A DNA stretch of 64,000 nt from Malacoraja senta. Its lineage: Eukaryota. Each line of letters opens with the position of its first letter. Position 1 is the stretch's first letter. The stretch covers positions 62,001 through 126,000 of the forward strand of contig JAXLNO010001347.1 in assembly GCA_038087875.1 (NCBI GenBank). Direction: 5' to 3'. A model generated the notes under the pieces. The model was not told where the DNA came from, ran no database searches, and worked only from the letters and a program-made list of their open reading frames with translations. Positions 25,518 through 62,882 of this stretch are shown piece by piece. The position numbers were made by a program, and so were the translations under genes.

Positions 25518-25795
25518 GGGTGACACGGTGGAACAGCGGTAGAGTTACTGCCTTACAGCTCAAGAGACCGCCAGGTTCAATCCTGACCATGGAGTTTTTA
25601 CATTCTACCTGTGGGATTTCCCTGGGTGCTCGAACTTCCTCCCACACTCCAAAGATGAGTTTGTAGTTTAATAGGGTTTGGTAAAGATTATAAATTGTTG
25701 CTAGTCTATAGGATATTGCTACTGTATGGTGATCGCTGTTCAGCGTGGACTTGGTGGGCTGAAGAGCCTGTTCCAATGCTATATATCTATACCAT
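25518..25795 (+). mobile_element. V-SINE-type SINE
   Basis: gggtgacacggtggaacagcggtagag head; ggttcaatcctgac B-box. Confidence 0.7.
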
Positions 25796-33146: not shown

Positions 33147-33351
33147 AACAGAGTGTAAATAAAACCTGGCATCCTCTGTGCCATTTAAATTAATTATGAT
33201 TGATGTATATTTTTATTCCATGCAATCTTACAAAGTATTCCACAATACACCACTCGGCAGCATTCAGTGGATGGTGCCTGAGGCAAGGCAACTCTTTGAA
33301 CTAGTTCATGGATCACATGTGTATTCTTTTTACATTGTCTTTTACAATTTA

Positions 33352-36300
33352 TTATTATTTTTTTTTAATTTTTATTTATTAGAAGTACATTACATTACAA
33401 CCGCATACATTAGTACTCGTCATTTATATCTTCTTTCAATTAATGTACTCCATTTATTTTTTACACTAGAAAAGGAAAAGATTGAAAGAAAGAAGAAAGT
33501 GAAGGAAAAAGTGAAAGTGTAGGAAATGTGACAACAAAAAAGGACAAAGACCCTATAAGAGCAAAATTAAAAACAAAAGAAAAAGAGTTAAGAAATAGGC
33601 CCTAGAAAAGAAAGAGAAAGAGAAAGAGGAAAAAGAGAGAAACAAATATTTTTTTGAGCATTACGTAAATGGGACATACCAACTCTTCAACTATCATCCC
33701 CCCTTACCTGACCTGAATTTTTTTTAAAGTACTTTTGCACCCTATATTTGTAATAATTCTATAAATGCAGACCACGTCAGGTGGAAGTGATCTGGTTTAC
33801 CTGCTAGGAGGAGTCTTATCTCTTCTAGGTGTAATGTTTCAAACATATTTGAAATCCACATATTTATAGTTGGTATTGGAGCCTTCTTCCAAAATTTTAG
33901 AATTAGCTTTTTTTCAGTTATTAACCCATAGTCCATTAGTTTCTTTTGAAACACATTTAGTTCTGGACCATCTTCCGTTATTCCGAAGATAATCCATTCT
34001 GCTTTGGGTATCAGTCTTGTTTTAAATAACTTTGTAAAGATTTCAAAAATTTCATTCCAAAATTTTTTAAATTTTTGTACAGAAAACGAATGAGTGCGCT
34101 ATAGTAGCTTCTTGGGATTGACATTTATCACACATTTATCACAAACACAGATCAAAAAATATTAGCGAAAACATTAGCTAGAAGATTAAGTAAATACATT
34201 AGTAAATTAATAAACCCAGATCAGACAGGGTTTATTCCTAAGAGATACTCTTCTAATAATATGAGACGTCTACTCAACATAATGCACTCACACAAATCTG
34301 AAGATCAAGAATTATCAATTATTTCGCTGGATGCTGAAAAAGCATTTGATCAAGTAGAATGGAATTATATGGATAAAGTATTACAAAAATTTCAACTGGG
34401 AGAGAATTTTATTTTATGGATTAAGTTACTATATAACAAACCTACAGCTAGAATACTTACTAATAACATATTATCCTCGAAATTTCAACTATCAAGGGGA
34501 AATAGACAAGGATGCTCATTATCACCACAGCTGTTTGCTCTCATTATTGAACCGCTAGCAGAAAAAATTAGAATACACCCTGATATTCATGGATATAATA
34601 CTAAAGACTCGTATAATAAAATATCTTTATACGTGGATGATATATTATTGTATATTACAAAACCTCAAATCACTATACCAAATATATTAAATTTAATTGA
34701 AGACTTCGGATCTTTTTCTGGATATAGAATAAATTGGAATAAAAGTGAAATTATGACAATAAAACCGAAAGATTCAACACATCTTTTAAAATTCCCTTTT
34801 AAAATAGCTACAGAAAAATTTAAATATTTGGGAATCGAAATTACCAGAACATATCAAGGTATGTTCGGGGCAAATTTTGACCCCCTACTTAATAAACTGA
34901 ATACATTAATTAAATTCTGGAAAACGCTCCCGATGTCTTTAATAGGCCGAATAAACGCAATAAAAATGATCTTTTTACCACAAATTTTATACCTATTTCA
35001 ATCAATTCCTATATACTTACCTAAGAAGTTTTTTAAAAAACTCGACTCAGATATCACTAATTTTATATGGGACTATAAATCACATAGAATACAAAAAACC
35101 CATCTGAATAAACCTAAAGTATTGGGGGGTCTAGCACTACCTAATTTTATGTATTATTATTGGTCAGTAAATATTAAAAACATGGTTCAACTGATGGATA
35201 ACTCCGCCCAGCAAGTAGACTGGATTGTAATGGAAAAAGAGGATTGCTCCTCTAGAAACATTGGAGCGATCCTCCTCTCTCCAATGAAATTGAATAACAT
35301 AAACTATAATAAGAACCCAATTATTCATAGTACAATCCGTATTTGGAAACAAATAAAACAAAATTTAAAATTAAGAAACTTATCACTTTTATTACCTATA
35401 GTCAATAACCCTTCGTTTAGTCCTTCTATTATAGATAAAGCTTATACACAATGGGATAGACTAGGAATTAAAACGCTTGGTGACTTGTATGAAACTGGAA
35501 AATTACTTTCATTTCAACAATTACAAATAAAATATAAACTCGGAAATAATCAATATTTTAAATACTTTCAAATATGCGACTATTTGAAAAAATATACAAA
35601 AGATCATCATAATAACCCAGCAGATGTACTGGACGAGGCAATGCAGATAAAAGCGGAATCAGCAAACTTAATATCATATTTGTATAATATTATCTTAAAT
35701 GCACAAATACCATCTACGGAGGGTATCAGAAGAGACTGGGAACAAGAGTTAGCTATTAAAATTTCAAAGGAAAGTTGGAATGAATACTTATTAAACGTGC
35801 ATAAATGCTCGATTAATGTAAGACACACTTTAATACAATTTAAAATTTTACATAGATTATATTATTCGAAAACTAAAATTCATAAAATTTTCCCAAACGT
35901 ATCATCTATTTGTGATAAATGTCAATCCCAAGAAGCTACTATAGCGCACTCATTTGTCTTCTGTACAAAAATTCAACAATTTTGGAATGAAATTTTTGAA
36001 ATCTTTACAAAGTTATTTAAAACAAGACTGATACCCAAAGCAGAATGGATTATCTTCGGAATAACGGAAGATGATCCAGAACTAAATGTGTTTCAAAAGA
36101 AATTAATGGACTATGGGTTAATAACTGGAAAAAAGCTAATTCTAAAATTTTGGAAGAAGGCTCCAATACCAACTATAAATATGTGGATTTCAAATATGTT
36201 TGAAACATTACACCTGGAAGAGATAAGACTCCTCCTAGCAGGTAAACCAGATCACTTCCACCTGACGTGGTCTGCATTTATAGAATTATTACAAACATAG

Positions 36301-36833
36301 GGTGCAAAAGTACTTTAAAAAAAAATAAAAAATTGAGGTCAGGTAAGGGGGGATGATAGTTGAAGAGTTGGTATGTCCTATTTACGTGATGCTCAAAAAA
36401 AAAACATTTGTTTCTTTTTTTTTTTCTCTTTCTCTTTTCTTTTCTTAGGGCCTATTTCTTAACTCTTTTTCTTTTTGTTTTTAATTTCGCTCTTATAGGG
36501 TCTTCGTCCTCTTTTGTTGTTACATTTTCTACACTTTTCTACACTTGCACTTTTTCCTTCACTTTCTTCTTTCTTTCAATCTTTTCTTTTTCTAGTGTAA
36601 AAAAATAAATAAAGGGAGTACATTAATTGTAAGAAGATATAAATGACGAGTATTAATGTATGTGGTTGTAATGTAATGTACTTCTAATAAATAAAAATTT
36701 AAAAAAAAAAAAAAAAAAAAATAGATGATACATTAGGGAAAATTTTATGAATTTTAGTTTTTGAATAATATAATCTATGTAAAATTTTAAATTGTATTAA
36801 AGCGTGTCTTACATTAATCGAACATTTATGCAC
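33352..36833 (-). mobile_element. 5'-truncated L1 (33352-34143 and 36721-36833), split by a second L1 and flanked by a 163-bp direct repeat
   Basis: The two pieces are contiguous in the full-length L1 (…gacatttatcacaa|atagatgatac… near 53400). Flanks 33189-33351 = 36834-36996. Confidence 0.88.
34144..36720 (+). mobile_element. 5'-truncated young L1 (RT, C-terminus, 3'UTR, poly-A) nested in the opposite-strand L1
   Basis: ORF 34261-36300 nearly identical to the C-terminal part of ORF2 53012-56803, but YVDD instead of YADD; poly-A at about 36700-36720. Confidence 0.93.
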
Positions 36834-37129
36834 ATTAATTATGATTGATGTATATTTTTATTCCATGCAATCTTACAAAGTATTCCACAATACACCACTC
36901 GGCAGCATTCAGTGGATGGTGCCTGAGGCAAGGCAGCTCTTTGAACTAGTTCATGGATCACATGTGTATTCTTTTTACATTGTCTTTTACAATTTAGTTG
37001 ACCAATTAGTTTAAATATTTTTCCCCCAAGTTACTGAACTTTTTCCACAGGAAGTACTTTTTTATGGCCCATTCTAGTGAGAATATTGATGACTGAAAAA
37101 CAAGAAAACTGTTCTTCTGTACTCACTCT

Positions 37130-40168: not shown

Positions 40169-40281
40169 AACCATATTTTTAGCATTTCCTGCCAAATCCA
40201 AAACTGTATCAGAAGATGACTTCTCACGCAATCTTGGTCTTATGTCATTTCAAATATTGTTTTGAAAATATTACTACACAC

Positions 40282-45832: not shown

Positions 45833-48800
45833 GTACTTCACAAAACCCATTAGCCAGATCAACACACGTAAATGGCAAAGAAAATCAAAGGAGCATTGGC
45901 GGCCATGGGTACCTGTGTTATATGGAAAATAAATTGGGAGGAATAGGACTGATGAATGAAAGAATGATTGAATGATACTCTATTGTCACATGTACCCAAG
46001 GTATCTGTGTATAGTGAAATGCTTTGTTTTCCATACAACCTCAGTCTATCCTTGACCGGACTTTGCTGGCTTCACCTTGCATTAAACATTATTCCTTTAT
46101 CATGTGTCTCTACACTGTAAATGCATTGATTGTAATCATGTATTGTCTTTCTACTGACTGGTTAGTAAGCAACAAAAAGCTTTTCACTGTACCTCGGTAC
46201 ACGTGACAATAAACTAAACTGAACCTAGGCAGTACAAAAATGTCGTCATGTGTTGGCGCAGACAAAGTTTCAAAGTACCGAACAGTCCTATCCACTGCCT
46301 GTTGCCGCACATGGCAACAGACCCCATCCCCACCAGTTCCCCCTTTGTTCTTAGTGGCGCCCCCATCCCCACAGTTCCCCATTTGTTCTCGTCCCCCTCA
46401 ATGGGACAGCCTCCCTGTGCTGAATGCCCTATGTCTACAATGTTCTAAGTATAAGATTAGATTAAGCAATGCTCACTGTTGGACTTTTTACCTGCAAACC
46501 TTTATTACTTTGTTGGTCTGTTTGAATACAAACATTCTTGGGTGTTCTTGTCTGTACAAACTAAAATGTGTTGGTTTCTCTGTGACGTTTGAATTCGGGT
46601 ATCATGCTCACCAATCTTTTTTAGCAGATGCAGCATGGAAACAGGCCTTTCTGCCCACTGAGTCTGCACTGACCATCAATCACCCATACACTAGTTCTAT
46701 GTTTTCCCTGTTTCACATCCAACACACTCAGGGCAATTTACAGCGGCCAATAAACCTACAAACACACACGTCTTTGGAACGTGGGACGAAACAATAGACA
46801 ATAGAGAATAGACAATAGGTGCAGGAGTAGGCCATTTGGCCCTTCGAGCCAGCACCGCCATTCAATGTGATCATGGCTGATCATCCCCAATCAGTACCCC
46901 GTTCCTGCCTTCTCCCCATATCCCCTGACACCGCTATCTTTAAGAGCCCTATCTAGCTCTCTCTTGAAAGTATCCAGAGAACCTGCCTCCATCGCCCTCT
47001 GAGCACCCAGAGGAAAGCCGAGCGGTCACAGGGAGAACGTATCAACTCCATACAAACAGAACTCATTGTTGGGATCCTTCTTGTGTCTGTGTAGGAAGGC
47101 ACTGCAGATGCTGGCTTACACCAAAGATAGAGACAAAATACTGGAGTAACGCAGTGGAACAGGCAGCATCTATGGATAAAAGGAATGTATCTTCTTGTAC
47201 CCCACTCATTATATATTAATTTATTGTAATTGGAGCAGTCTGCAAAACTCTCCATAGACAAGAACAAGTGTTTATGTGGATTGGCTACCATTAAACACTA
47301 GTCCCCTGCAATAAAATGCAGATTTAGGATTTTACAGATCAATACTTTGAGGGCCCCGTTTACAATGATATGTACATCCCATCATTTAGAATGCCCCTTC
47401 ACCTACTCTTTTGAAGCCTTCTCCACACATATAGTCACAGAGACACACAAACAGAACCTTCAGCCGACAGTCCACTCTGACCATGAAGCACTCATTCCAT
47501 ACCATTCCATCCCACCATTGAATAGATCTACAGGAGGTGCTGCCTCAGAAAGACAGCTAATATCATCAGAGACCCACACCACCCTGGCCATACTCTCAGG
47601 GCCAGCCACCCTGGACCAGGAATTCGCCCGGAAGATCTGGCCCATCCATCACGGACTGAGTTCTTGCTCGCTGTGGACCGTGGATGGAGGACCCACCTGG
47701 AAGGCCCAGCTTGCCCGCCCAGAGTGTAAGGAGTCAGATGGATGGCTTATAGGCAGACAAGCTGCGGGAGGGAATGGACTGCCTCAACAATGGAGTGGGT
47801 GCTGGAGGCCCTACAGCAGCCTGGGGCTTGGCTGTTCCAGGCGCTGCTCCAAGAGGCCGGGCACATGGACCAGTTGCGCCCTGCAGCAGTAGAGGACACC
47901 ACAGCTTTGATTGGACAGGTCAACCCTGCAACAACACCAGGACAATGGGCCTCATGGTCAGGCCAAGAACCCTCACTTACAACAACTGGGACGTGAAAAT
48001 GGCACCATAAACTGGCGACACTGTATACTGTCTCAGCGTACTACTGCTATACACTTGTACTGTATCTGAGATGCTTATCTAAGATGTATCTAAGGACATA
48101 TATAGTGATACTTGTACTAAACTGTATACAATAATGAATTTCACTGTACCTCAGTACTTGCCACATATAAAATACCATTGAACCAATCAACTGCCTCTGA
48201 GGTTAGAGAGCCTGAGAACTGTTAGCTCCAGGTTTAAGAGCAGCTTTTTTCTCATGAGCAGCAGACATTTAAACACTGCACAATACTAACCACAACCTTA
48301 CCTCAACAACTCTGATCTGTGATGGACTTTATTTTGGTTGCAGTAAGGACGTTTTGTTTTTCCACTGTTATGGTCTGGTTACCTAGTATAACTAATATTA
48401 ATTAATTGTACCATTGATTGTTGTATATTTAATATATGTATAAGAATGTCATTGTTCCATTGCCAGTACAGATGACAATTAAACTCTTGCTCTTGACCAA
48501 TTAATTCTTATTCTCTGCAAATTCCCATCATCTCTCTCCAGATTCTATCACTTACCTACAAATGACAGTCAATTTACACTGTAGAAACAAGGAACTACAA
48601 ATGTTGGTTCACAAAAAGTTGCAAAGTGCTGGAGCACCTTAGTGGGTCCGGCAGCATCCTTGGAGAACATGGATATGTGATGATGGATAGATGTTTCGGG
48701 TCAAGACCCCTTCTTCACTCTGTGGAAGGGTGTTTACCCTAAACGTCATCTAGCCACGTTCTCCGGAGATGCTGCCTGACCAGCTGAGTTACTCCAGCAC

Positions 48801-50184
48801 ATAGCGATAGACACAAAATGCTGGAATAACTCAGTGGGACAGGCAGAATCTCTAGAGAAGGAATGGGTGATGTGTCAGATTGAGGCCCTTCTTCAGACTT
48901 TGTCATCATTGTGCTAGCTTGCTCCAATCCCATTCACCCATCATTTTTCTGATTGAAAAATATTCAGATTTCAAACTCTGATGATTGTATTTAAATATCT
49001 AAGACCAACAGCTCTTTCATTCAAAACATATCTTTCAATCATTTGTTCTTATATCTCTCTATATCACCGCCTGTATCTCTCGTTTCCCTTTCCCCTGACT
49101 ATCAGTCTGAAGAATGGTCTCGACCTGAAACGCTACCTATTCCTTTTCTCCAGAGTCGCTGTCCGACCCGCTGAGTTACTCCAGCATTTTGTGTCTATCT
49201 TCGGTTTAAACCAGCATCTGCAGTTCCTTCCTACGCAGCTCCTCCCTCGGCATGCATACAGTCCATACAATTTCACAGTTGAGGTTAGCGTTGTGTAGTG
49301 TTCAAGTGCGTGATAGTTGTTGGGAAGAAGCTATTCTTGAACCTGGTTGTCATGGTTTTCAAACACCTATACTTTCTTCCCCATGGTGGGAGGTAATGAA
49401 AGTGTGGCCAGGGGGATGATGTTGCCTTCCTTTTTGAGGCAGCGTCTTGTGTGGATCCCTTCAATGGTGGTGAGGTCAGAACCCACGATGAACCGGGCAG
49501 TATAACTTCCTGATTATTCACAAATTTAAGTATTTCATCTGAAGAGCAGGCCTAAGTCATAGAATTGCTCTCTAAATATCCCTTCCTTTAAGATGCACCT
49601 TAAATGTTTATTTTGCTAATTGTCATGTCATGCCATTATACTGCTCGAAGTAAAATGTTACAGAATAATACTCTTACGAATCTCATTGAAGCATTTTCCT
49701 AAATTGGAACTGCTATAAATGTTATTCTTTATATCTAAGCCTGTTTCCCCTTTCACCAAATTAGAATATTACCATCAAAGGAGAATGTCATTGTTTTGTT
49801 TGGCTCTGGAGATGCGTGTTGGAATGTGATCATTAAAATCTTCTTGTATATTGAACCCTGAACTACACTATACTCAGCTATGATTAATGAACAAAATAAA
49901 GACAAAGTGTTGGAGTAACTCAGCAGATCAGGCAGCATCGCTGGTGAGAATGGATAGGTAATGTGTCGAGTCGGACCCTGTAGACCTATGGACTGTCTTT
50001 GGTTAAACTAAGCATTTGCGGTGTATTTGCACATGTATTGGGATTATCAATTAACTGAATTTTTAGTATGTTATCTATTTGTATTGTCTTACAGGTCTGC
50101 TACATGAATGTCATTGTTTTGTAGTCAGCACATTGAACATTCTATACTATCTTTCCTTCTGGACTCTCTTGTGGAGTGGGATCA

Positions 50185-52099
50185 AACCTAACATAAGCAA
50201 AATGTTGCCATTCATCCTTTGTTCCCAATCTCTGATATTCTATAAGATCATAACCGATCCTCTAGCAGACCACCAATTTTCTGAATTCCGGATTCCTTTT
50301 GTATCCAAGCATATTCCTATCCCTGCCTCAAGCATCTGATTGACTTAAAGCCCACAGCCTACTTGGACAGAGAATTTGAAAGACTAATTAAAACTAATTT
50401 CATCTCATTACTGCACTGAATTCAATGATTCAATGATATTTTATTGTCACATGCACCTAGGCACAGTGAAATGCTTTGTTTCGCATACAATGGTAAAATC
50501 ATATAGCAGACCTAAACTAGACAATACACAAGTATCACCGTGTTTTGGTGCCATAAGAATGTCTGAACCCTTATTTTTAAACTGTGAATTTTGGTTCCAG
50601 ACACACCAGTCTGGGAGAAATAAAAAGATCATCCCTCATGTTCTGAACTTTGACTCACTTCATAAGTCAAAGGTGCAGAATTTGGTTGGTCGACCCATCG
50701 AGTTTACTCCACAATTTAATCATGGCTGACCTATCGTTCCCTCTCAGTGCCGTTCTCCTGTCATCTCCCTGTGACCTTTGACACTCTTACAAATCGGGCG
50801 GCATTTTCTGTTTTTGTATTCCAGTCCTCTTGATATAAATCACCTTCCTGACTACCGATTCAATTTGCAAATTAACCTTTTGAGAGTCCTGCACCAACAC
50901 TCCCATGTCACTGTGTGCCTCCGATTTCTGGATTCTCTCTCCATTTGTAAAATAATCTACGCCTTTATTCTTATTACCAAAATGCATGTCTCCACACTTT
51001 GCTATACTGGATTTCATCTGCCACTTCTCTGCCCACTCTCCTAACCTGTACACGTTCACATTACAGGAGTAGAATTAGGCCATTCGGCCCATCGAGTCTA
51101 CTCCACCATTCCATTATGGCTGATCTGTGCCTCCTAATCCCATTTTCCTGCCTTCTCCCCATGATAACCCATTCTAATCAAGAATTTGTCGATCTCTGCC
51201 TTAAAAATATCCACCAACTTGGACTCCACAGCCCTCTGTGGCAATGTGTTCCACAGATTAACTACCCTCTGACTAAAGAAATTCCTCCTCACCTCCTTTC
51301 TAAAAGAGCACCCTTTAATTCTGAGGCTATGACCTCTGGTCCTAGACTCACCCACCAGTGGAAACATCCTTTCCACATCCACTCTATCTTTGCCTTTCAT
51401 TATTCTGTCAGTTTCAATGAGGTTCCCCCCTCAACCTTCTTACCTCCAGCGAGTAGAGGCACAGTCCTGTCAAACTATCATCATATGCTAACCCACTCAT
51501 TCATGGAATTATTCTTGTAAACCTCCTCTGAACCAGAGCCAGCACATCCTTCCTCAGATAGGGGGCCCAAATTTCCACACTGTACTCCAAACGTGGCCTG
51601 ACCAGCGCTTTTGAAGCCTCAGAATGACATTTCTGTTTTTGTAATCCAGTCCTCTTGATATAAATCACCTTCCTGACTACCGATTCAATTTGCAAATTAA
51701 CCTTTTTGGGAGTCCTGCACCAGCACTCCCATGTCACTGTGTGCCTCCGATTTCTGGATTTACTCTCCATTTGTAAAATAATCTACGCCTTTATTCTTAT
51801 TACCAAATGCATGTCTCCACACTTTGCTACACTGGATTTCATCTGCCACTTCTCTGCCCACTCTCCTAACCCGAACAAGTCCTTCTGCAAAGTCCTTGCA
51901 TCCTCTACACTGCCTGCCCCTCCACCTATTTTAGCATCATCTGCAAACTTGGCCACAAAACTTTCAATCCCCTTCCAGTGGAAGTGGTGGAGGCAGGTTC
52001 GATGTTATCCTTTAAAAATAGATTGGATGGGTATATGGACGGGAAAGGAATGCAGGGTTATGGTCTGAGTACAGGTAGATGGGACTAGGGGGAAGTTAA

Positions 52100-52134
<35 letters not shown>

Positions 52135-52593
52135 TTCGGCACAGACTTGAAGGGCCGAGATGGCCTGTTTCCGTGCTGTTATGGTTATATGGTTATCCAA
52201 ATCACTACTAAACAACATAAACGTGACGACCGCACGTTTGGAGCTAAGAGTTGTCACTCAGTCAATAGCAAATTCCACAGTGTGTGCTAATCTTTTAGTG
52301 ATTTTGCATTGTACTACTGCCTCGCTCTCTTCCCACATTTCAGAATCAGATCAATCAGAATCAGAATCACACTTTATTCGCCAAGTATGTTTTGCAACAT
52401 ACGAGGAATTTGGCCATAAACTTGAACCTGTCAAACAATGCACTTTGTGTAAGAAAGAACTGCAGATGCTGGTTTAACTCAAAGGTAGACACAAAATGCT
52501 GGAGTAACTCAGCAGGCAGGCAGCATCTCTGGAGAGAAGGAATGGGTGACCTATCGGGTCGAGACCCTTCTTCAGACTGATGTCAGGGGAGTT
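50185..52593 (+). repeat. 2.4-kb direct repeat, copy A (left of the full-length L1)
   Basis: Matches 58877-61286 (offset 8692/8693; identical ORFs appear twice in the track); contains CR1 fragments and a Penelope terminus. Confidence 0.97.
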
Positions 52594-53011
52594 TTTTTTT
52601 TATTTATTTTTTTTTAATTTTTATTTATTAGAAGTACATTACATCACAGCCACATACATTAATACTCGTCATTTATATCTTCTTACAATTAATGTACTCC
52701 CTTTATTTATTTTTTTACACTAAAGAAAGAAAAGATTGAAAGAGAGAAGAAAGTGAAGGAAAAAGTGCAAGTGTAGAAAAGTGTAGAAAATGTAACAACA
52801 AAAAAGGACGAAGACCCTATGAGAGCGAAATTAAAAACAAAAAGAAAAAGAGTTAAGAAATAGGCCCTAAGAAAAGAAAAGAGAGAGAGAAAAAAAGAAA
52901 AACAAATGTTTTTTTTTTTGAGCATCACGTAAATAGGACATACCAACTCTTCAACTATCATCCCCCCTTACCCGACCTCAATTTTTTATTTTTTTAAAGT
53001 ACTTTTGCACC

Positions 53012-56000
53012 CTATGTTTGTAATAATTCTATAAATGCAGACCACGTCAGGTGGAAGTGATCTGGTTTACCTGCTAGGAGGAGTCTTATCTCTTCAAGGT
53101 GTAGTGTTTCAAACATATTTGAAATCCACATATTTATAGTTGGTATTGGAGCCTTCTTCCAAAATTTTAGAATTAGCTTTTTTCCAGTTATTAACCCATA
53201 ATCCATTAATTTCTTTTGAAACACATTTAGTTCTGGATCATCTTCCGTTATTCCGAAGATAATCCATTCTGCTTTGGGTATCAGTCTTGTTTTAAATAAC
53301 TTTGTAAAGATTTCAAAAATTTCATTCCAAAATTTTTGAATTTTTGTACAGAAGACAAATGAGTGCGCTATAGTTGCTTCTTGGGATTGACATTTATCAC
53401 AAATAGATGATACGTTTGGGAAAATTTTATGAATTTTAGTTTTCGAATAATATAATCTATGTAAAATTTTAAATTGTATTAAAGTGTGTCTTACATTAAT
53501 CGAGCATTTATGTACTTTTAATAAGTATTCATTCCAACTTTCCTTTGAAATTTTAATAGCTAACTCTTGTTCCCAGTCTCTTCTGATACCCTCCGTAGAT
53601 GGTATTTGTACATTTAAGATAATATTGTACAAATATGATATTAAGTTTGCTGATTCCGCTTTTATCTGCATTGCCTCGTCCAGTACATCTGCTGGGTTAT
53701 TATGATGATCTTTTATATATTTTTTCAAATAGTCGCATATTTGAAAGTATTTAAAATATTGATTATTTCCGAGTTTATATTTTATTTGTAATTGTTGAAA
53801 TGAAAGTAATTTTCCAGTTTCATACAAGTCACCAAGCGTTTTAATTCCTAGTCTATCCCATTGTGTATAAGCTTTATCTATAATAGAAGGACTAAACGAA
53901 GGGTTATTGACTATAGGTAATAAAAGTGATAAGTTTCTTAATTTTAAGTTTTGTTTTATTTGTTTCCAAATACGAATTGTACTATGAATAATTGGGTTCT
54001 TATTATAGTTTATGTTATTCAATTTCATTGGAGAGAGAAGGATCGCTCCAATGTTTCTAGAGGAGCAATCCTCTTTCTCCATTACAATCCAGTCTACTTG
54101 CTGGGCGGAGTTATCCATCAGTTGAATCATGTTTTTAATATTTACTGACCAATAATAATACATAAAATTGGGTAGTGCTAGACCCCCCAATACTTTAGAT
54201 TTATTCAGATGGTTTTTTTGTATTCTATGTGATTTATAGTCCCATATAAAATTAGTGATATCTGAGTCGAGTTTTTTAAAAAACTTCTTAGGTAAGTATA
54301 TAGGAATTGATTGAAATAGGTATAAAATTTGTGGTAAAAAGATCATTTTTATTGCGTTTATTCGGCCTATTAAAGACATCGGAAGCATTTTCCAGAATTT
54401 AATTAATGTATTCAGTTTATTAAGTAGGGGGTCAAAATTTGCCCTGAGCATACCTTGATATGCTCTGGTAATTTCGATTCCCAAATATTTAAATTTTTCT
54501 GTAGCTATTTTAAAAGGGAATTTTAAAAGATGTGTTGAATCTTTCGGTTTTATTGACATAATTTCACTTTTATTCCAATTTATTCTATATCCAGAAAAAG
54601 ATCCGAAGTCTTCAATTAAATTTAATATATTTGGTATAGTGATTTGAGGTTTTGTAATATACAATAATATATCATCCGCGTATAAAGATATTTTATTATA
54701 TGAGTCTTTAGTATTATATCCATGAATATCAGGGTGTATTCTAATTTTTTCTGCTAGCGGTTCAATAATGAGAGCAAACAGCTGTGGTGATAATGAGCAT
54801 CCTTGTCTATTTCCCCTTGATAGTTGAAATTTCGAGGATAATATGTTATTAGTAAGTATTCTAGCTGTAGGTTTGTTATATAGTAACTTAATCCATAAAA
54901 TAAAATTCTCTCCCAGTTGAAATTTTTGTAATACTTTATCCATATAATTCCATTCTACTTGATCAAATGCTTTTTCAGCATCCAGCGAAATAATTGATAA
55001 TTCTTGATCTTCAGATTTGTGTGAGTGCATTATGTTGAGTAGACGTCTCATATTATTAGAAGAGTATCTCTTAGGGATAAACCCTGTCTGATCTGGGTTT
55101 ATTAATTTACTAATGTATTTACTTAATCTTCTGGCTAATGTTTTCGCTAATATTTTTTGATCTGTGTTTAACAATGCTATAGCTCTATATGAGCCAGGTT
55201 CTTCTAAATCCTTATTTTTCTTAGGTATTAATGTAATCGTTGATTCCGCTAATGTATCAGGTAGTATTCGTTTTTTAAAAGCGTATTGGTACATTTTTTG
55301 TAATCTTGGTATTATTTTATCATAAAAGTTTTTATAAAATTCATTAGTAAATCCATCAGGGCCTGGTGTTTTTCCATTTTTTAGTGAGTTTATTGTATCT
55401 TCTAATTCCTTAATTGAGATTTGTGCACCCAGTTCCTCTTGTTCCTTCAGCTCTAACTTTGGAAGATTACAGGTATCCAAGAACTTTGTGATATTATTGG
55501 AATCAATTATCGTTTTAGATGTATACAAATTCTCGTAAAATTGCGCAAATCTTTTATTAATATCCTTCGGTGTTGTTAATAATTCCCCTTTATCTGATTT
55601 GATCTTTGGTATAGTATGTTCCTTTTCTCGTTTTTTTAGCTGGCGAGCCAAAAGTTTATGCGGTTTATCCCCAAATTCAAAGTGCTCTTGTTTTGTAATT
55701 TGAAAAAGTCTTATAAGTTTGGCAGATAATAATTTATTTAATTTAAATTTTAAAATTATTATTTTATTATGTTTATCTATTGATGGATCTTTAGCATTAT
55801 CTATATCCATTTGTCTAATAAGTTCTTCTAACTGTCTTTGTTCATTCTTATTCTTTTTATTTTGAAAAGCTTGATATGAAATTATAATACCCCTAATGTA
55901 TGCTTTAAAAGATTCCCAAAGTAAAGTAGGCGATATATCTGAAGTATCATTTGTTTGAAAAAAGACCTCCATTTGTTCTTTTAAATATATACTCGCTTGT

Positions 56001-56803
56001 GGATCTTTTAAAATTTGAGAGTTAAATCTCCAGAATGAATTATTCTTAGACAATCCTTCCAGTTTTAAAAAGAAAGTTAGTGGAGAATGGTCTGAAATTG
56101 AATTTGTATGATATATTGCATTAGATGTTTGGGGGATTAATTTTGTATCCAGCAGAAAGTAGTCTATACGTGAGTATGTCTTATGTACCATTGAGTAAAA
56201 CGAATATTCCCTGCCAGTTGGATTCACAATTCTCCAAACATCTGCTATATTAGTGTTGTTTATGTAGGTATTGAGGAGTTCCCCAGTTTTCGATTTCATA
56301 TTCCCTCTCTGTTTTTGACTTGATTTATCTAAGTACGGGTCTAAAACACAGTTAAAGTCTCCGCCTATTATAACATTTTGATAGTTTGACTCTGCAATTA
56401 TATTGAAGATTTTATTGAAAAAGTGGGGGTTATCAAAGTTAGGGGCATATATATTTACCAAAGTAAGTGGAGTGTCATGGATTTCTCCATTAACTATTAG
56501 GTATCTCCCTTCTATATCTGTTATAATATTCTTTGCTTTAAATGGTATACCTTTTCTTATGATAATTGACGTGCCTCTAGATTTTGAAGTGAATGAAGAG
56601 TGGTATGTTTGACCTATCCATTTCGCCCTCAGCCTAACTTGGTCCTGAGGTTTTAGGTGTGTTTCTTGTAGGAAGGTAATGTCAGAATTATACATTTTTA
56701 GCTGAGCTAATATCTTACCCCTTTTGATAGGTTCATTAATACCTCTTATATTCCAACTACAAAATGAGACTCCTCCTAGGTTCTTTTGTGTGGTGTCATG
56801 CAT
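53012..56803 (-). CDS. L1 ORF2p (1263 aa): AP endonuclease, reverse transcriptase and CCHC domain
   Basis: SWNIRGIN, FLQETH, GGDFN, SRIDYF, SDHSP; GKTPGPDGF, DAEKAFD, RQGCSLSP, LYADD, FKYLG; CDKC..HSFVFC. No stops. Confidence 0.97.
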   Translation of the reverse strand: MHDTTQKNLGGVSFCSWNIRGINEPIKRGKILAQLKMYNSDITFLQETHLKPQDQVRLRAKWIGQTYHSSFTSKSRGTSIIIRKGIPFKAKNIITDIEGRYLIVNGEIHDTPLTLVNIYAPNFDNPHFFNKIFNIIAESNYQNVIIGGDFNCVLDPYLDKSSQKQRGNMKSKTGELLNTYINNTNIADVWRIVNPTGREYSFYSMVHKTYSRIDYFLLDTKLIPQTSNAIYHTNSISDHSPLTFFLKLEGLSKNNSFWRFNSQILKDPQASIYLKEQMEVFFQTNDTSDISPTLLWESFKAYIRGIIISYQAFQNKKNKNEQRQLEELIRQMDIDNAKDPSIDKHNKIIILKFKLNKLLSAKLIRLFQITKQEHFEFGDKPHKLLARQLKKREKEHTIPKIKSDKGELLTTPKDINKRFAQFYENLYTSKTIIDSNNITKFLDTCNLPKLELKEQEELGAQISIKELEDTINSLKNGKTPGPDGFTNEFYKNFYDKIIPRLQKMYQYAFKKRILPDTLAESTITLIPKKNKDLEEPGSYRAIALLNTDQKILAKTLARRLSKYISKLINPDQTGFIPKRYSSNNMRRLLNIMHSHKSEDQELSIISLDAEKAFDQVEWNYMDKVLQKFQLGENFILWIKLLYNKPTARILTNNILSSKFQLSRGNRQGCSLSPQLFALIIEPLAEKIRIHPDIHGYNTKDSYNKISLYADDILLYITKPQITIPNILNLIEDFGSFSGYRINWNKSEIMSIKPKDSTHLLKFPFKIATEKFKYLGIEITRAYQGMLRANFDPLLNKLNTLIKFWKMLPMSLIGRINAIKMIFLPQILYLFQSIPIYLPKKFFKKLDSDITNFIWDYKSHRIQKNHLNKSKVLGGLALPNFMYYYWSVNIKNMIQLMDNSAQQVDWIVMEKEDCSSRNIGAILLSPMKLNNINYNKNPIIHSTIRIWKQIKQNLKLRNLSLLLPIVNNPSFSPSIIDKAYTQWDRLGIKTLGDLYETGKLLSFQQLQIKYKLGNNQYFKYFQICDYLKKYIKDHHNNPADVLDEAMQIKAESANLISYLYNIILNVQIPSTEGIRRDWEQELAIKISKESWNEYLLKVHKCSINVRHTLIQFKILHRLYYSKTKIHKIFPNVSSICDKCQSQEATIAHSFVFCTKIQKFWNEIFEIFTKLFKTRLIPKAEWIIFGITEDDPELNVFQKKLMDYGLITGKKLILKFWKKAPIPTINMWISNMFETLHLEEIRLLLAGKPDHFHLTWSAFIELLQT

Positions 56804-57611
56804 TTTGAATAATTATAGTACCTTTGAATCTTGTGGTGCGTCCATATCCCAGGTCTTTAGGTATTGGGGGAGTTTTTGAATTATTAACTTTTGTTGGTAT
56901 GTCCATATTATTCTTATCACTAAACACAAAACACAAACAAGTGATTTTATGTAATAAAAAAAAAACTAAAAAAGTGAGGCTACAGTGTCTATAGTCGGCA
57001 CTGTAGCAAGTGACCCACCTGTAGGTGGGAAAAAACCTTATTTTGACTTCCATTGCGTTGTTGCTCAACTCGCTCCGCTCTCTTAGTTAATCATAACATA
57101 TTAAAATATTAAAACGAGGCCTCACATTCATATATATAATACAATTTTACCCTGATATTTCCTTATAACATATATATATATATCAGAGTTTAATTATTAA
57201 ACCAATATTTTTGATTTCAATAAGAATCAGCTGTTGGTTGAAGGGGTTAACGAGACGTGCTCCTGGACATAAGCCAGGAGCTCGTTTCTCATCCCCTCCT
57301 CCCGCTTATAGACAAGGTTACAATTTATTAAAAATTCATATTAGTATGTTAGTTCATTATTTTTTTGTTTTTTTTTGTTAGTATTCTAATCTAACCTGCA
57401 TAACTTTTAAAGTTGTTAATAGGATAAGTTCTTACAATTGGTTATAACATTTTAATCAATAAGCAATTATTTTCTAATTCATATCCCGTTATAAAGTTGT
57501 TTACACGTTTTGAACAGAAAATGTCCTTGCTTCAACATTCCGGAGATAACAGTGTAACTATCCCCAGACAAAACATAGCTGAGAATTATTCGGATCTGCC
57601 AAAGCTCCCTT

Positions 57612-58682
57612 TTATTTCTGTCTTTCAACAATCGTTTGGGCATATTTGAAAGCGTCTTCAGGCTTAACAAATGACTTTTCAAGACCATTAAAAGAAATAC
57701 GCATTTTAGCGGGATAAAAAACCCCGAATCTGACCCCTTCTCTCCCTCTTAAAAGATCTTTAACCTTATCAAATTTATTTCTTTTTTGCACAATTTCATG
57801 TGGGTAGTCCCTGAATATCTTAATAGTGTCTTTGTCCAGCCGTAATTGTACACCATATTTGATTTTGGTCATAACATATTCCAGTTCTGCAGTGTCTCGA
57901 AATTTCACTATAATATGTCGTGGATAAGCTTTTCCCGCATCAAATCTTTTTCCAAATCTTGGGACACGATGAGCCACTTCGATTTTCGGTTCCTTGGGAA
58001 GATTCAACAGTTGTTTCAACAAGCCCATGGCAAATTCACGTACCTGTTCCCCTTCTGCCCCCTCTGAAACACCAAGAATCCTCAGATTCTGGCGTCTAGA
58101 ACGAGCTTCCAGGTCCAGGCATTTGAATGAGACTTTCTCTAATTGAGTCCCCATTTGTAGTGATGCTTGTTCGTTTTCTCGCCTCATTTGCTCATGTTCT
58201 TGCCTCAATTTCGCCATGTCTTCAACCAGTCGTGCCGTATTTTTCTCCAATTCCGTAATTGTCTGCATACTTGCAGCTACTGTTTCAAGTACAGCCGTGA
58301 ACTTATCCGTAGTAATTACATCCATCTTATCCATTTTCTCTGATAGTCCATCTTTCACCTCATCAATTCGTTTATTCATAGTGTCCAGTAAATCCGTCAT
58401 ATTCTTCTGGTTACCAGCATTTAAATCCTTCATCATCTTCTGCATTCCTTCCATCATTTTTGCCGAATTTTCCTTCATTTCCTTCTTATCTTCCACCCTA
58501 TTATCCGAGATCTCATCTTTCAAATTTTTCATTGATTTTTTCAAGTCATCAAAGTCTTTCTTAGATCTTGTATCCATTTCTGCAGCCACTTCAGAGACTT
58601 CAGAGGTAACTTCAGTTTCGAACTGTTTCGACAGTTTATTCACAGCTCTCTGAGGGCTCACAGCTGGAGTCAATTTACTCAT
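57612..58682 (-). CDS. L1 ORF1p (356 aa): coiled coil, RRM and CTD
   Basis: Heptad-rich N-half, DLEARSRRQNLRILGVSEG, IEVAHRV, PRHIIVKF, IFRDYP, GVFYPAKMRI. Confidence 0.93.
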   Translation of the reverse strand: MSKLTPAVSPQRAVNKLSKQFETEVTSEVSEVAAEMDTRSKKDFDDLKKSMKNLKDEISDNRVEDKKEMKENSAKMMEGMQKMMKDLNAGNQKNMTDLLDTMNKRIDEVKDGLSEKMDKMDVITTDKFTAVLETVAASMQTITELEKNTARLVEDMAKLRQEHEQMRRENEQASLQMGTQLEKVSFKCLDLEARSRRQNLRILGVSEGAEGEQVREFAMGLLKQLLNLPKEPKIEVAHRVPRFGKRFDAGKAYPRHIIVKFRDTAELEYVMTKIKYGVQLRLDKDTIKIFRDYPHEIVQKRNKFDKVKDLLRGREGVRFGVFYPAKMRISFNGLEKSFVKPEDAFKYAQTIVERQK

Positions 58683-58876
58683 TTAAAGGGCTTCAAACCA
58701 CCGTTTAAAACATCGCGTTTAACGATGACGTCATCAGCGCGGTAACCAGAAGCTCCGGTAAGGTTTTTAAAAACAATCCCGATTTTCGGACCCGTTTTAC
58801 ACGATAAATCGTGAAGTTTTTCGGGAGAGGAGCTGGGTGCACGTCTGTTAGTCTAACATGACGCCACCGGAAGTCT

Positions 58877-61286
58877 AACCTAACATAAGCAAAATGTTGC
58901 CATTCATCCTTTGTTCCCAATCTCTGATATTCTATAAGATCATAACCGATCCTCTAGCAGACCACCAATTTTCCGAATTCCGGATTCCTTTTGTATCCAA
59001 GCATATTCCTATCCCTGCCTCAAGCATCTGATTGACTTAAAGCCCACAGCCTACTTGGACAGAGAATTTGAAAGACTAATTAAAACTAATTTCATCTCAT
59101 TACTGCACTGAATTCAATGATTCAATGATATTTTATTGTCACATGCACCTAGGCACAGTGAAATGCTTTGTTTCGCATACAATGGTAAAATCATATAGCA
59201 GACCTAAACTAGACAATACACAAGTATCACCGTGTTTTGGTGCCATAAGAATGTCTGAACCCTTATTTTTAAACTGTGAATTTTGGTTCCAGACACACCA
59301 GTCTGGGAGAAATAAAAAGATCATCCCTCATGTTCTGAACTTTGACTCACTTCATAAGTCAAAGGTGCAGAATTTGGTTGGTCGACCCATCGAGTTTACT
59401 CCACAATTTAATCATGGCTGACCTATCGTTCCCTCTCAGTGCCGTTCTCCTGTCATCTCCCTGTGACCTTTGACACTCTTACAAATCGGGCGGCATTTTC
59501 TGTTTTTGTATTCCAGTCCTCTTGATATAAATCACCTTCCTGACTACCGATTCAATTTGCAAATTAACCTTTTGAGAGTCCTGCACCAACACTCCCATGT
59601 CACTGTGTGCCTCCGATTTCTGGATTCTCTCTCCATTTGTAAAATAATCTACGCCTTTATTCTTATTACCAAAATGCATGTCTCCACACTTTGCTATACT
59701 GGATTTCATCTGCCACTTCTCTGCCCACTCTCCTAACCTGTACACGTTCACATTACAGGAGTAGAATTAGGCCATTCGGCCCATCGAGTCTACTCCACCA
59801 TTCCATTATGGCTGATCTGTGCCTCCTAATCCCATTTTCCTGCCTTCTCCCCATGATAACCCATTCTAATCAAGAATTTGTCGATCTCTGCCTTAAAAAT
59901 ATCCACCAACTCGGACTCCACAGCCCTCTGTGGCAATGTGTTCCACAGATTAACTACCCTCTGACTAAAGAAATTCCTCCTCACCTCCTTTCTAAAAGAG
60001 CACCCTTTAATTCTGAGGCTATGACCTCTGGTCCTAGACTCACCCACCAGTGGAAACATCCTTTCCACATCCACTCTATCTTTGCCTTTCATTATTCTGT
60101 CAGTTTCAATGAGGTTCCCCCCTCAACCTTCTTACCTCCAGCGAGTAGAGGCACAGTCCTGTCAAACTATCATCATATGCTAACCCACTCATTCATGGAA
60201 TTATTCTTGTAAACCTCCTCTGAACCAGAGCCAGCACATCCTTCCTCAGATAGGGGGCCCAAATTTCCACACTGTACTCCAAACGTGGCCTGACCAGCGC
60301 TTTTGAAGCCTCAGAATGACATTTCTGTTTTTGTAATCCAGTCCTCTTGATATAAATCACCTTCCTGACTACCGATTCAATTTGCAAATTAACCTTTTTG
60401 GGAGTCCTGCACCAGCACTCCCATGTCACTGTGTGCCTCCGATTTCTGGATTTACTCTCCATTTGTAAAATAATCTACGCCTTTATTCTTATTACCAAAT
60501 GCATGTCTCCACACTTTGCTACACTGGATTTCATCTGCCACTTCTCTGCCCACTCTCCTAACCCGAACAAGTCCTTCTGCAAAGTCCTTGCATCCTCTAC
60601 ACTGCCTGCCCCTCCACCTATTTTAGCATCATCTGCAAACTTGGCCACAAAACATTCAATCCCCTTCCAGTGGAAGTGGTGGAGGCAGGTTCGATGTTAT
60701 CCTTTAAAAATAGATTGGATGGGTATATGGACGGGAAAGGAATGCAGGGTTATGGTCTGAGTACAGGTAGATGGGACTAGGGGGAAGTTAATAAATTTAA
60801 AAAATAAATAAAAAATTAAAAAAAGCATTCGGCACAGACTTGAAGGGCCGAGATGGCCTGTTTCCGTGCTGTTATGGTTATATGGTTATCCAAATCACTA
60901 CTAAACAACATAAACGTGACGACCGCACGTTTGGAGCTAAGAGTTGTCACTCAGTCAATAGCAAATTCCACAGTGTGTGCTAATCTTTTAGTGATTTTGC
61001 ATTGTACTACTGCCTCGCTCTCTTCCCACATTTCAGAATCAGATCAATCAGAATCAGAATCACACTTTATTCGCCAAGTATGTTTTGCAACATACGAGGA
61101 ATTTGGCCATAAACTTGAACCTGTCAAACAATGCACTTTGTGTAAGAAAGAACTGCAGATGCTGGTTTAACTCAAAGGTAGACACAAAATGCTGGAGTAA
61201 CTCAGCAGGCAGGCAGCATCTCTGGAGAGAAGGAATGGGTGACCTATCGGGTCGAGACCCTTCTTCAGACTGATGTCAGGGGAGTT
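58877..61286 (+). repeat. 2.4-kb direct repeat, copy A' (right of the full-length L1)
   Basis: Three substitutions seen versus copy A (50282/58974, 51220/59912, 51962/60654), plus a different A-tract. Confidence 0.97.
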
Positions 61287-62515
61287 GACGGGACAAAGAT
61301 AGAATGTAGTTGAAGACATTAAGACTGGTGGGAGAACTGGGATGGGGAGGGGATAGAGAGGGAATGCAAGGGCTATTTAAAGTTAGAGAAGTCAATGTTC
61401 ATACAGCTGGGGTGTAAACTACCCAAGTGAAATATGAGGTGCTATTCCTCCAATTTGCACTGGGCCTCACTCTGACAATGGAGGAGGCCCAGGACCGAAA
61501 GGTCAGATTGTGAATGGGAGGGGAAGTTGAAGTGCTGAGCAACCAGGAGATCAGGTAGGTTAAGATGGACAGAGCGGAGTAGTTCAGTGAAATGATTGCC
61601 GAGCCTGTGCTTGGCCTCGCTGATGTAGAGAAGTTGGCTCCTGCAACTGCAGATGCAGTAGATGAGGTTCGAGGAGGTGCAAGTGAACCTCTGCCTCACC
61701 TGGAAAGACTGCTTGGGTCCTTGGATGGAGTTGAGGGGAGAGGGAAAGGGACAGGTGTTGCATCTCCTGCGGTTGCAGGGAAAGTACCTGGGGAGGGGGT
61801 GGTTTGGGTGGAAAAGGACGAGTTGATGAGGGAATTTCCGAGGGAACGGTCTCCACGAAAAGCAGAAAGGGGAGGAGATGGGAAGATGTGGCCAGTAGTG
61901 GGATCCCGTTGGAGTTGGCAAAAATGATGGAGGATTATATGCTGTATGCGACGGCTGATGGGGTGGAAGGTGACGACAAGGGGGACTCTGTCCTTGGTAC
62001 GAATGGGGGGGGGGGGGGGGGGTAGGGAGAGTAAGAGCGGAGCATCGAGGAAACCCTAGTGAGTGCCTCATCTATAATGGAAGAAGGGAACCCCAGTTTC
62101 CTAAAGAATGAGGACATCTCCGATGCCCTGGAAAAGAAAACCTCATCCTGGGCGCAGATGCTGCGTAGACGGAGGAAGTGGTAGTCGGGATACAGTCTTT
62201 ACAGGAAGCAGGGTGGGAAGAAGTGTAGTCCAGATAGCTATGGGAGTCAGTAGGTTTGTAGTAGATGTCGGTCAATAGTATGTTTCCTGTTATGGAGATG
62301 GTGAGATCTAGAAACGGTAGGGAGATGTCCGAGATGGTCCAAGTGAATTGGAGTGCAGGATGGAAATTGGTGGTGAAGTTGATGAAGTCAGTGAGTTCTG
62401 CATGGGAGCAGGAAGTAGCATCAATGCAGTCGTCAATGTAGCGGAGATAGAGTTCGGGGATCGGGCCAGTGTACCTCTGGAACAGTGATTGTTCGATGTT
62501 CCCTACAAGGGCAGC
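61140..62515 (-). mobile_element. Penelope-like element (RT C-terminus, GIY-YIG, terminal repeat), frameshifted
   Basis: LYLRYIDDC...LPFLDL..YYKPTDSHSYL; CNRRRCNTC..QHFN. Its terminus is the point where the 2.4-kb duplication ends. Confidence 0.9.
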
Positions 62516-62882
62516 CACAGCCCTTTCCCGCCTCTCCCACATTGTATTCCCATTCTTACAATAACAACTTGAAATCAAAGATGTTTTTGTTTCAAACCGC
62601 GTCGCTCCTGTTTGTTTTACACAAGTTTAAATCAGTTTAAACCAATATCTGCAGTTCCTTCTTCCACAAAGGAAACGATGCATTGTGCAAATCAATGCAG
62701 AAATTCCAGTCTGGATTGTACTGAAACAGTGAAAATTAAACCCTTTTAACGTCCGCATGAACCATGAACCAGATTGAATGTGTATTGCGCGCTTTTTTAA
62801 ACGCAGTCGCCTCCGGTCAAGATTGAGATAAAGCCAAGACGCTTTTAGCCAGTAGCGAATTAAATGAGAATCATTAACTTAC

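What the first reader, a model, noticed from the sequence alone, without database searches (positions are those of the whole stretch)
50185..61286. Full-length L1 bracketed by a ~2.4-kb direct repeat in exact TSD geometry
Seen: 50185-52593 is repeated at 58877-61286. One copy abuts the L1 poly-A and the other abuts the first base of the L1 5' end. Removing the L1 and one copy restores a continuous Penelope element (…tgatgtcaggggagttgacggg…). There is no second poly-A at the far end, so this is not a 3' transduction. Known: L1 TSDs are normally about 7-20 bp; kilobase duplications have been reported only as rare events. Inference: the second-strand nick occurred 2.4 kb from the first, or insertion was coupled to break-repair synthesis. 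The three substitutions and the different A-tract suggest two real, slightly diverged copies. The novel L1-5'/copy-A' junction is hard to produce by simple haplotype collapse.
Basis: partly seen in the sequence, partly recalled or inferred. Interest (0 to 1): 0.78.

Follow-up and report, generated by a model that had tools for sequence, protein, structure and literature searches.

The report
L1 insertion with 2.4-kb target duplication
In a skate genome, an intact, young L1 jumping gene sits exactly between two near-identical 2.4-kb copies of its insertion site, so the insertion most likely copied 2.4 kb of host DNA (old transposon debris only); this outcome is known from human cell cultures and tumours but is rarely seen fixed in a germline.

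Summary
Window 50185-52593 and 58877-61286 are 99.67% identical direct repeats. They differ by three substitutions and one remodelled A-tract. They lie flush against the two ends of a 6,283-bp minus-strand L1 with intact ORF1 and ORF2 (endonuclease, RT, zinc knuckle) and a poly-A tail.

The junction from copy B into the right flank is continuous Penelope-like sequence, as an independent paralog at 9.4-10.2 kb shows. Copy A is cut at that same point by the L1 poly-A. The nick site reads GAGTT/GACGGG.

There is no second poly-A, no short TSD and no assembly gap. The only other direct repeat of at least 99% in the window is a 163-bp pair bracketing a second, 5'-truncated L1 of the same lineage.

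Best reading (about 0.75): one target-primed insertion whose second-strand break lay about 2.4 kb from the first, or an equivalent break-repair fill-in. Assembly error cannot be excluded without reads (about 0.12).

Kilobase TSDs are documented for human L1 in cultured cells and tumours, so this is a new member of a known kind. The duplicated DNA holds no gene.

The scan has already noted similar cases on other DNA of this genome (314 bp, 1.2 kb and 2.48 kb L1 cases, and a 1.96-kb Hero case). The wider lead is that long TSDs may be common in this skate.

The parts
50185..52593 (.). Copy A of the 2.4-kb duplication. This copy abuts the L1 poly-A.
   Evidence: 99.67% identical to 58877-61286. 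Identity ends at 50184/50185 on the left and at 52593/52594 on the right.
52446..52593 (-). 3' terminal stretch of a Penelope-like element, lying inside copy A and cut off by the L1 tail.
   Evidence: Aligns to paralogs at 9423-9571, 49091-49237 and others. Alignment A1 shows the break at GAGTT.
52594..58876 (-). Full-length L1 element, 6,283 bp including the tail.
   Evidence: ORFs and Pfam domains. The 3' 2.58 kb is 98.2% identical to a second copy at 34143-36721. The nearest database ORF2 proteins are L1-type, 38-54% identical.
52594..52617 (-). Poly-A tail, 24 nt and A-rich, following the conserved 3' end ...AATAAATAAAAATT.
   Evidence: Comparison of three 3' ends of the lineage shows that the tails vary after the same conserved end.
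53012..56803 (-). L1 ORF2, intact, 1263 aa: AP-endonuclease, reverse transcriptase and zinc knuckle.
   Evidence: Pfam Exo_endo_phos 1.5e-16, RVT_1 1.4e-39, zf-RVT 5e-4.
56804..57611 (-). 808-bp AT-rich spacer between ORF1 and ORF2.
   Evidence: Three-frame translation shows no open frame. ORF1 ends with a complete C-terminal region.
57612..58682 (-). L1 ORF1, intact, 356 aa.
   Evidence: ORF list. Coiled-coil-like match and a weak Transposase_22 (L1 RBD-like) match at 197-268.
58683..58876 (-). L1 5' UTR, 194 nt. The sense strand starts AGACTTCCGGTGGCG.
   Evidence: Sequence read directly. The end is defined only by the start of copy B.
58877..61286 (.). Copy B of the duplication. It abuts the L1 5' end and runs on into the right flank.
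61287..62578 (-). Remainder of the interrupted Penelope-like element: C-terminal part of the RT plus the GIY-YIG endonuclease region.
   Evidence: 61290-61946 aligns to 9571-10227 at 87%, directly continuing the paralog's match to the end of the repeat. The Atlas neighbours of the 209-aa ORF are GIY-YIG / HTH_animal / RVT_1 clusters.
52106..52131 (+). Internal A-tract: pure A26 in copy A, against a T-interrupted tract at 60799-60824 in copy B.
33189..36996 (-). Second case in the same window. A 5'-truncated L1 (33348-34132 plus 36719-36839) is flanked by a 163-bp direct repeat (33189-33351 = 36834-36996). It is split by a nested plus-strand L1 at 34143-36721.
   Evidence: One mismatch in 163 nt. 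Nick site ACAATTT/AGTTGAC.

Best explanation
This is a single germline L1 retrotransposition event by target-primed reverse transcription.

The L1 endonuclease nicked the window's plus strand at GAGTT/GACGGG, inside the tail of an old Penelope-like element. The 3' OH primed reverse transcription of a full-length L1 RNA from its poly-A.

Integration was then completed using a break in the other strand about 2,409 bp away, at 50184/50185, instead of the usual 7-20 bp. Fill-in of the two long single-stranded stretches left the 2.4-kb target on both sides of the element. Equivalently, copying could have run from the reciprocal end on the intact strand.

Shown here: the geometry, the L1 identity, the interrupted Penelope, and the lack of alternative hallmarks. 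Inferred: that all of this happened in one event, and how the second break arose. The sequence cannot separate a distant nick from break-induced copying.

The insertion is young, with 3 substitutions in about 2.4 kb between the copies. It duplicated only transposon debris.
For: - Flush 2.4-kb direct repeats at 99.67% on both L1 ends.
- Intact L1 with endonuclease, RT, ORF1 and an A-tail.
- Copy B runs without a break into the Penelope remainder, exactly as in the independent paralog at 9423-10227. Copy A is cut there by the tail.
- The nick site ends in TT followed by a purine. The other two insertions of this lineage in the window have ATTT/A and ATTT/G.
- No short TSD, no second poly-A, and no gap or N.
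- Two of the three substitutions are CpG-to-TpG, a mutational rather than error signature.
- The only two direct repeats of at least 100 bp and at least 99% identity in 64 kb both bracket L1s: this one and a 163-bp one.
- Kilobase L1 TSDs are documented. In NER-deficient human cells the median is 1,495 bp and the maximum 5.3 kb, and events over 100 bp occur in under 10% of HeLa insertions (PMC5223499). Tandem duplications of 1-10 kb are described as 'regarded as large TSDs' in tumours and clones.
Against: - No empty allele and no reads are available.
- The left boundary (50184/50185) lies in sequence with no paralog, so its ancestral continuity is assumed.
- The L1 5' end cannot be compared with another full-length copy.
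- The nick site has only two T residues, a weak match to the TTTT/A preference.
- The A-tract differs by four T/A changes plus an indel. That is more than the point-mutation load elsewhere. It needs slippage, error-prone fill-in or a local assembly error.
Confidence: 0.75

Rival explanations
1. Assembly artefact. The second copy of the 2.4-kb stretch is the other haplotype, or an under-collapsed read, placed in tandem. The true locus then has one copy.
For: The copies differ by about 0.12% plus a variable A-tract, which is also what two alleles would look like. No reads could be examined.
Against: A single ordinary L1 insertion cannot give both observed junctions (repeat end to poly-A, and L1 5' end to repeat start). 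The repeat's start and end share no similarity that could cause a misjoin. [quoted passage not shown] Here there is no N in 64 kb, and the spacer is exactly one complete L1. A second L1 in the window has the same geometry at 163 bp.
Confidence: 0.12
2. An older tandem duplication X-X existed first. An L1 later inserted, without any TSD, exactly at its junction.
For: The hypothetical junction would read AGTT/AACC, an acceptable endonuclease site. Insertions without a TSD do occur: the nested L1 at 34143-36721 shows none.
Against: It needs a blunt insertion at one exact position out of about 4.8 kb. It also needs a very recent unrelated duplication at 99.67% identity. The 163-bp case, and the notes on many similar L1-flush duplications in this genome (leads only), would each need the same coincidence.
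Confidence: 0.05
3. Transduction. The L1 RNA carried flanking DNA from a source locus (5' or 3' transduction), so one copy came in with the element.
For: Read-through and upstream-initiated L1 transcripts are known to carry flanks (general knowledge of L1 biology).
Against: A 3' transduction needs a second poly-A after the carried segment. The base run left of 50185 is GGAGTGGGATCA, with no poly-T. A 5' transduction would need a source locus with a 99.7% identical segment, a transcript starting exactly at the repeat boundary, and insertion exactly at the matching boundary of the target. Neither would leave the element without its own short TSD.
Confidence: 0.02

Closest known systems
Kilobase-scale TSDs of engineered human L1 in cultured cells (Servant et al. 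2017, PMC5223499; also Gilbert 2002/2005 and Symer 2002 as cited there)
   Same: L1 with a poly-A tail at an endonuclease-type site, flanked by direct duplications of the target of hundreds of bp to about 5 kb. The proposed cause is use of a distant second-strand nick.
   Different: Those are somatic events in human cell lines. They are frequent only when XPA, XPC or XPD is missing. Here the event is a natural, germline-transmitted, full-length insertion in a cartilaginous fish with presumably normal repair.
L1-associated 1-10 kb tandem duplications in tumours and L1-induced clones (bioRxiv 10.1101/2024.12.14.628481)
   Same: A tandem duplication with a polyadenylated L1 at the junction. [quoted passage not shown]
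   Different: Those are somatic or cancer events, mostly with 5'-truncated inserts. This one is a fixed or segregating germline allele with an intact element.
Ordinary L1 TPRT insertion with a 7-20 bp TSD
   Same: Element type, poly-A at the 3' junction, a T-rich/purine nick site, and flush direct repeats.
   Different: The repeat is about 100-300 times longer than usual.
False (heterotype) duplication in a genome assembly (Ko et al. 2022, PMC9516828)
   Same: Two near-identical adjacent copies differing at the level of alleles.
   Different: There is no gap between the copies. The spacer is exactly one complete retrotransposon with both junctions novel. Read depth is not testable here.

Membership tests
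L1-clade non-LTR retrotransposon | ORF2 with an N-terminal AP-type endonuclease followed by reverse transcriptase | tested here: met
   Exo_endo_phos at 15-239 (1.5e-16) and RVT_1 at 526-778 (1.4e-39) in the 1263-aa ORF. The nearest proteins are L1-type ORF2s, some named LINE-1 reverse transcriptase.
L1-clade non-LTR retrotransposon | ORF1 with a coiled coil and an L1-type RNA-binding domain | tested here: inconclusive
   Intact 356-aa ORF. Transposase_22 matches at 197-268 but below the Pfam cut-off (18.4 versus 22.4 bits). Helical-repeat match at 24-140.
L1-clade non-LTR retrotransposon | 3' end with a polyadenylation signal and an A-tail of variable length between copies | tested here: met
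   Three copies share ...CTAATAAATAAAAATT and then carry different A-rich tails.
TPRT insertion with target-site duplication | Direct repeats flush with the 5' end and with the poly-A, nothing in between | tested here: met
   Identity starts at 58877 and ends at 52593, to the base.
TPRT insertion with target-site duplication | Removing the element and one repeat restores a continuous pre-insertion sequence | tested here: inconclusive
   Right boundary met: the paralog at 9423-10227 is continuous across it. Left boundary untestable: there is no paralog and no empty allele.
TPRT insertion with target-site duplication | First-strand nick at a T-rich/purine endonuclease site | tested here: inconclusive
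   GAGTT/GACGGG has only two T residues before the cut. The sister insertions have ATTT/A and ATTT/G.
3' transduction | A second poly-A at the far end of the carried segment, followed by a short TSD | tested here: not met
   There is no T-run left of 50185 on the plus strand.
False assembly duplication | A gap or unsupported sequence between the copies | tested here: not met
   No N in the window. The spacer is an intact L1. Criterion taken from PMC9516828.
False assembly duplication | Half-normal read depth over each copy | not testable with these tools
   No reads are available.
Penelope-like element (host of the insertion) | RT followed by a C-terminal GIY-YIG endonuclease | tested here: inconclusive
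   Pfam finds nothing in the decayed ORFs. Atlas neighbours at 0.95 are GIY-YIG / HTH_animal / RVT_1 clusters. No hammerhead was found by Rfam at E of 1 or less.

The most novel reading that the evidence does not exclude
Long target duplications (10^2-10^3 bp) may be a regular outcome of germline LINE integration in this skate, not a freak event.

Two of the three L1 insertions of this lineage in this one window have TSDs over 100 bp. Unchecked notes of the scan list about a dozen more in the same genome, from 40 bp to 2.5 kb, including one R2-type element. That points to a host-level or lineage-level difference in how the second strand is cut or the flap is processed, like the phenotype of NER-deficient human cells. 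It would make LINE insertion a steady source of small segmental and exon duplications.
Probability: 0.35. Interest if true: 0.75.

Novelty: new member of a known kind. Interest (0 to 1): 0.45.

Why it matters
By itself the locus is a clean natural example of something shown mainly in human cell culture and tumours: a single L1 insertion can duplicate kilobases of target DNA. Here it duplicated only dead transposon sequence, so it has no functional consequence.

Its value is as one data point in a possible genome-wide pattern. If long TSDs are common in skates, the still poorly understood second-strand step of TPRT could be studied by natural comparison of element against host, with NER and flap processing as candidates. 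L1 would also be a direct generator of small duplications near genes. This window lies in an MHC class I region.

Tried and rejected
- Fetching other copies of the family, to define the true 5' end and a TSD length distribution. The exact ORF2 and ORF1 are not on record. The best ORF2 relative in 5.8 billion proteins is only 54% identical and sits on short contigs. This led nowhere.
- Looking for a paralog spanning the left boundary. None exists in the window. ORFs and sequence across 50185 show nothing recognisable.
- Rfam scan for Penelope hammerheads at 47-64 kb. Only two sub-threshold chance matches appeared.
- Pfam on the decayed Penelope and LINE peptides. There were no hits. Identity was instead supported by Atlas neighbours and by in-window comparison with an RVT_1 ORF.
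- An older, 48%-identical L1 fragment at 5418-7419 was checked for flanking repeats. None was found, so it is uninformative.
- An LTR-like composite element was rejected. The repeat's right end is not an element boundary but runs on into Penelope.
- A Penelope pseudo-LTR was rejected. Only 147 bp of the repeat is Penelope.
- Twin priming at the 33-37 kb locus was rejected. The two L1 parts differ in subfamily (92% versus 98% identity to the main element), so it is a nested insertion.
- The search of earlier findings by sequence with the L1 5' UTR returned nothing.
Full report
OBSERVATION

The repeat is present as described. BLAST and a global alignment give 50185-52593 = 58877-61286 (2409 versus 2410 nt, 99.67% identity). 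Identity collapses abruptly at all four edges.

The copies differ as follows:
- 50282 T/C and 51220 T/C. Both are CpG in copy B and TpG in copy A.
- 51962 T/A.
- One internal A-tract. It is pure A26 at 52106-52131 in copy A and interrupted by T residues at 60799-60824 in copy B.

The window contains no N.

WHAT LIES BETWEEN THE COPIES

52594-58876 is a 6,283-bp element on the minus strand.
- ORF2 (53012-56803, 1263 aa) carries Exo_endo_phos (1.5e-16), RVT_1 (1.4e-39) and zf-RVT.
- ORF1 (57612-58682, 356 aa) is intact. It has a helical N-terminal half and a sub-threshold match to the L1 RNA-binding domain. Its C-terminal end is complete.
- The nearest ORF2 proteins in a 5.8-billion-protein collection are L1-type proteins of fishes, 38-54% identical.
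- The 3' end reads ...CTAATAAATAAAAATT followed by a 24-nt A-rich tail. Two other 3' ends of the same lineage in the window share that end and carry different tails.

So this is an intact, full-length, probably recently active L1. A second copy of its 3' 2.58 kb at 34143-36721 is 98.2% identical.

THE TARGET

The last ~147 bp of the repeat plus the right flank belong to one decayed Penelope-like element on the minus strand.
- An independent paralog at 9423-10227 aligns first to 52447-52591 and then, without interruption, to 61290-61946. Alignment A1 shows copy B running straight through, while copy A turns into the poly-T at GAGTT.
- The 209-aa ORF at 61442-62071 has GIY-YIG / HTH_animal / RVT_1 clusters as its Atlas neighbours, with a score of 0.95. 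Pfam itself finds nothing.
- The remaining ~2.26 kb of the repeat is not Penelope. It holds fragments 55-56% identical at protein level to an RVT_1-bearing non-L1 LINE ORF at 24414-25526, a 243-bp piece repeated at 825-bp spacing, and unannotated DNA.

The left boundary (50184/50185) lies in sequence with no paralog in the window, and nothing recognisable crosses it. Its ancestral continuity is assumed.

GEOMETRY AND ALTERNATIVES

Read in the L1's sense, the order is: right flank, copy B, L1, poly-A, copy A, left flank. This is exactly the TSD arrangement.
- The first-strand nick on the plus strand is GAGTT/GACGGG. That is two T residues and then a purine, a weak but acceptable endonuclease site.
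- No short TSD is present. The bases before the tail are not repeated after the 5' end.
- 3' transduction is excluded, because there is no poly-T left of 50185.
- 5' transduction would need a 99.7% identical source segment, a transcript start at the exact repeat boundary, and insertion at the exact matching boundary.
- A pre-existing X-X tandem duplication hit blunt at its junction needs one exact position in about 4.8 kb, plus an unrelated very recent duplication.
- A simple haplotype artefact cannot produce both novel junctions from one ordinary insertion. False duplications are typically separated by gaps (PMC9516828), whereas the spacer here is precisely one complete element and there are no gaps.
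- Two of the three substitutions are CpG transitions. These are real mutations or real allelic variants, not random read errors.

A SECOND CASE IN THE SAME WINDOW

A self-comparison of all 64 kb shows only two direct repeats of at least 100 bp at 99% identity or more. Both bracket L1s. The second is 33189-33351 = 36834-36996, 163 bp with one mismatch.

It flanks a 5'-truncated minus-strand L1 of a sister subfamily (33348-34132 plus 36719-36839, 92-93% identical to the main element). That L1 has a canonical nick site, ACAATTT/AGTTGAC, and a few bases of microhomology at the truncated 5' junction.

This L1 is itself split by a nested plus-strand L1 (34143-36721). The nested element has no TSD, but it does have an 11-bp tandem duplication at its 5' junction.

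So two of three insertions of this lineage in the window have TSDs above 100 bp. This confirms the earlier scan note s1-140565.

MECHANISM

The most likely history is one TPRT event whose completion used a second-strand break about 2.4 kb from the first. Fill-in of both long overhangs followed. The outcome is the same if break-induced copying ran from the reciprocal end along the intact strand.

Both routes are proposed in the literature and give identical sequence, so they cannot be separated here.

The remodelled A-tract needs four T/A changes and an indel, while only three substitutions occur in the other 2.38 kb. It could be microsatellite slippage after the event, a scar of error-prone fill-in, or a local consensus error. 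This is unresolved.

Three substitutions in about 2.4 kb make the event young.

COMPARISON WITH WHAT IS KNOWN

- Servant et al. (PMC5223499) recovered human L1 inserts with TSDs from 5 bp to 5.3 kb (median 1,495 bp) in NER-deficient cells. They state that TSDs over 100 bp make up less than 10% of events in HeLa.
- The 2024-26 preprint 10.1101/2024.12.14.628481 reports 1-10 kb tandem duplications with L1 at the junction in tumours and clones. It calls them large TSDs and favours break-induced replication.
- The phenomenon is therefore known. What is less usual is a germline-transmitted, full-length example in a cartilaginous fish.
- Two full-text searches for long TSDs in skates or other fishes found no paper on them in the library.

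CONTEXT FROM THE SCAN (LEADS, NOT EVIDENCE)

The same genome, a skate according to s1-140364, has notes on L1s flanked by duplications of 40, 314, about 480, 498, about 700, 784 and 871 bp, and of 1.2 kb and 2.48 kb. There is also a Hero element with a 1,955-bp duplication. Three of these have follow-up reports that reached the same reading.

I tested only the 163-bp case. If the pattern holds, the interesting question moves from this locus to why long TSDs are common in this host or L1 lineage.

VERDICT

- Real one-event duplication: about 0.75.
- Assembly artefact: about 0.12.
- Pre-existing tandem duplication: about 0.05.
- Transduction: about 0.02.

This is a new member of a known kind. 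The duplicated DNA has no gene content. Interest is moderate (0.45), mostly as part of the possible genome-wide pattern.

Noticed in passing
window 33189-36996: A second L1 of the same lineage, 5'-truncated and on the minus strand, has a 163-bp TSD with one mismatch. It is split by a nested plus-strand L1 (34143-36721, 98.2% identical to the main element). The nested element has no TSD, but 'CATTTATCACA' is duplicated in tandem at its 5' junction.
   Followed up: yes
window 56804-57611 (minus strand): The L1 has an 808-bp AT-rich non-coding spacer between ORF1 and ORF2. By my own recollection, not checked here, mammalian L1 spacers are only tens of bp. Both ORFs look complete, so this is not a broken frame.
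   Followed up: partly
window 58860-58876 (minus strand): The L1 sense strand begins AGACTTCCGGTGGCGTCATG. This holds an ETS-type CCGGAAGT core within the first 12 nt, which fits an internal promoter with a start site at or near the element's first base. This is inference only.
   Followed up: no
window 52106-52131 versus 60799-60824: The A-tract inside the duplicated segment is pure A26 in one copy and T-interrupted in the other (four T/A changes plus an indel). That is far more change than elsewhere in the repeat. It could be slippage, error-prone repair synthesis or a consensus error.
   Followed up: partly
window 50805-51046 / 51630-51871 (and 59497-59738 / 60322-60563): A 243-bp piece of a decayed non-L1 LINE is repeated at 825-bp spacing (96.7% identity) inside each copy of the duplication.
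   Followed up: partly
window 447-975 versus 40278-40806; 1-164 versus 41198-41362: Inverted repeats of 530 bp (95%) and 165 bp (96%) lie about 40 kb apart. They are not associated with the L1. They may be paralogous gene or TE segments of this MHC class I region.
   Followed up: no
window 17807-18725 versus 24336-25260: A 926-bp direct repeat at 92% identity. The second copy lies in an RVT_1-bearing ORF (24414-25526, minus strand), so these are two copies of one non-L1 LINE family.
   Followed up: partly
window 48700-49240, 49890-49980, 52446-52593, 63120-63370: There are many short (40-150 bp) copies, in both orientations, of the Penelope terminal motif ...CTGAAGAAGGGTCTCGACCC.... Rfam finds no hammerhead at E of 1 or less in 47-64 kb. 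In the copy at the L1 insertion site the GAAA of the expected core reads GATA.
   Followed up: partly
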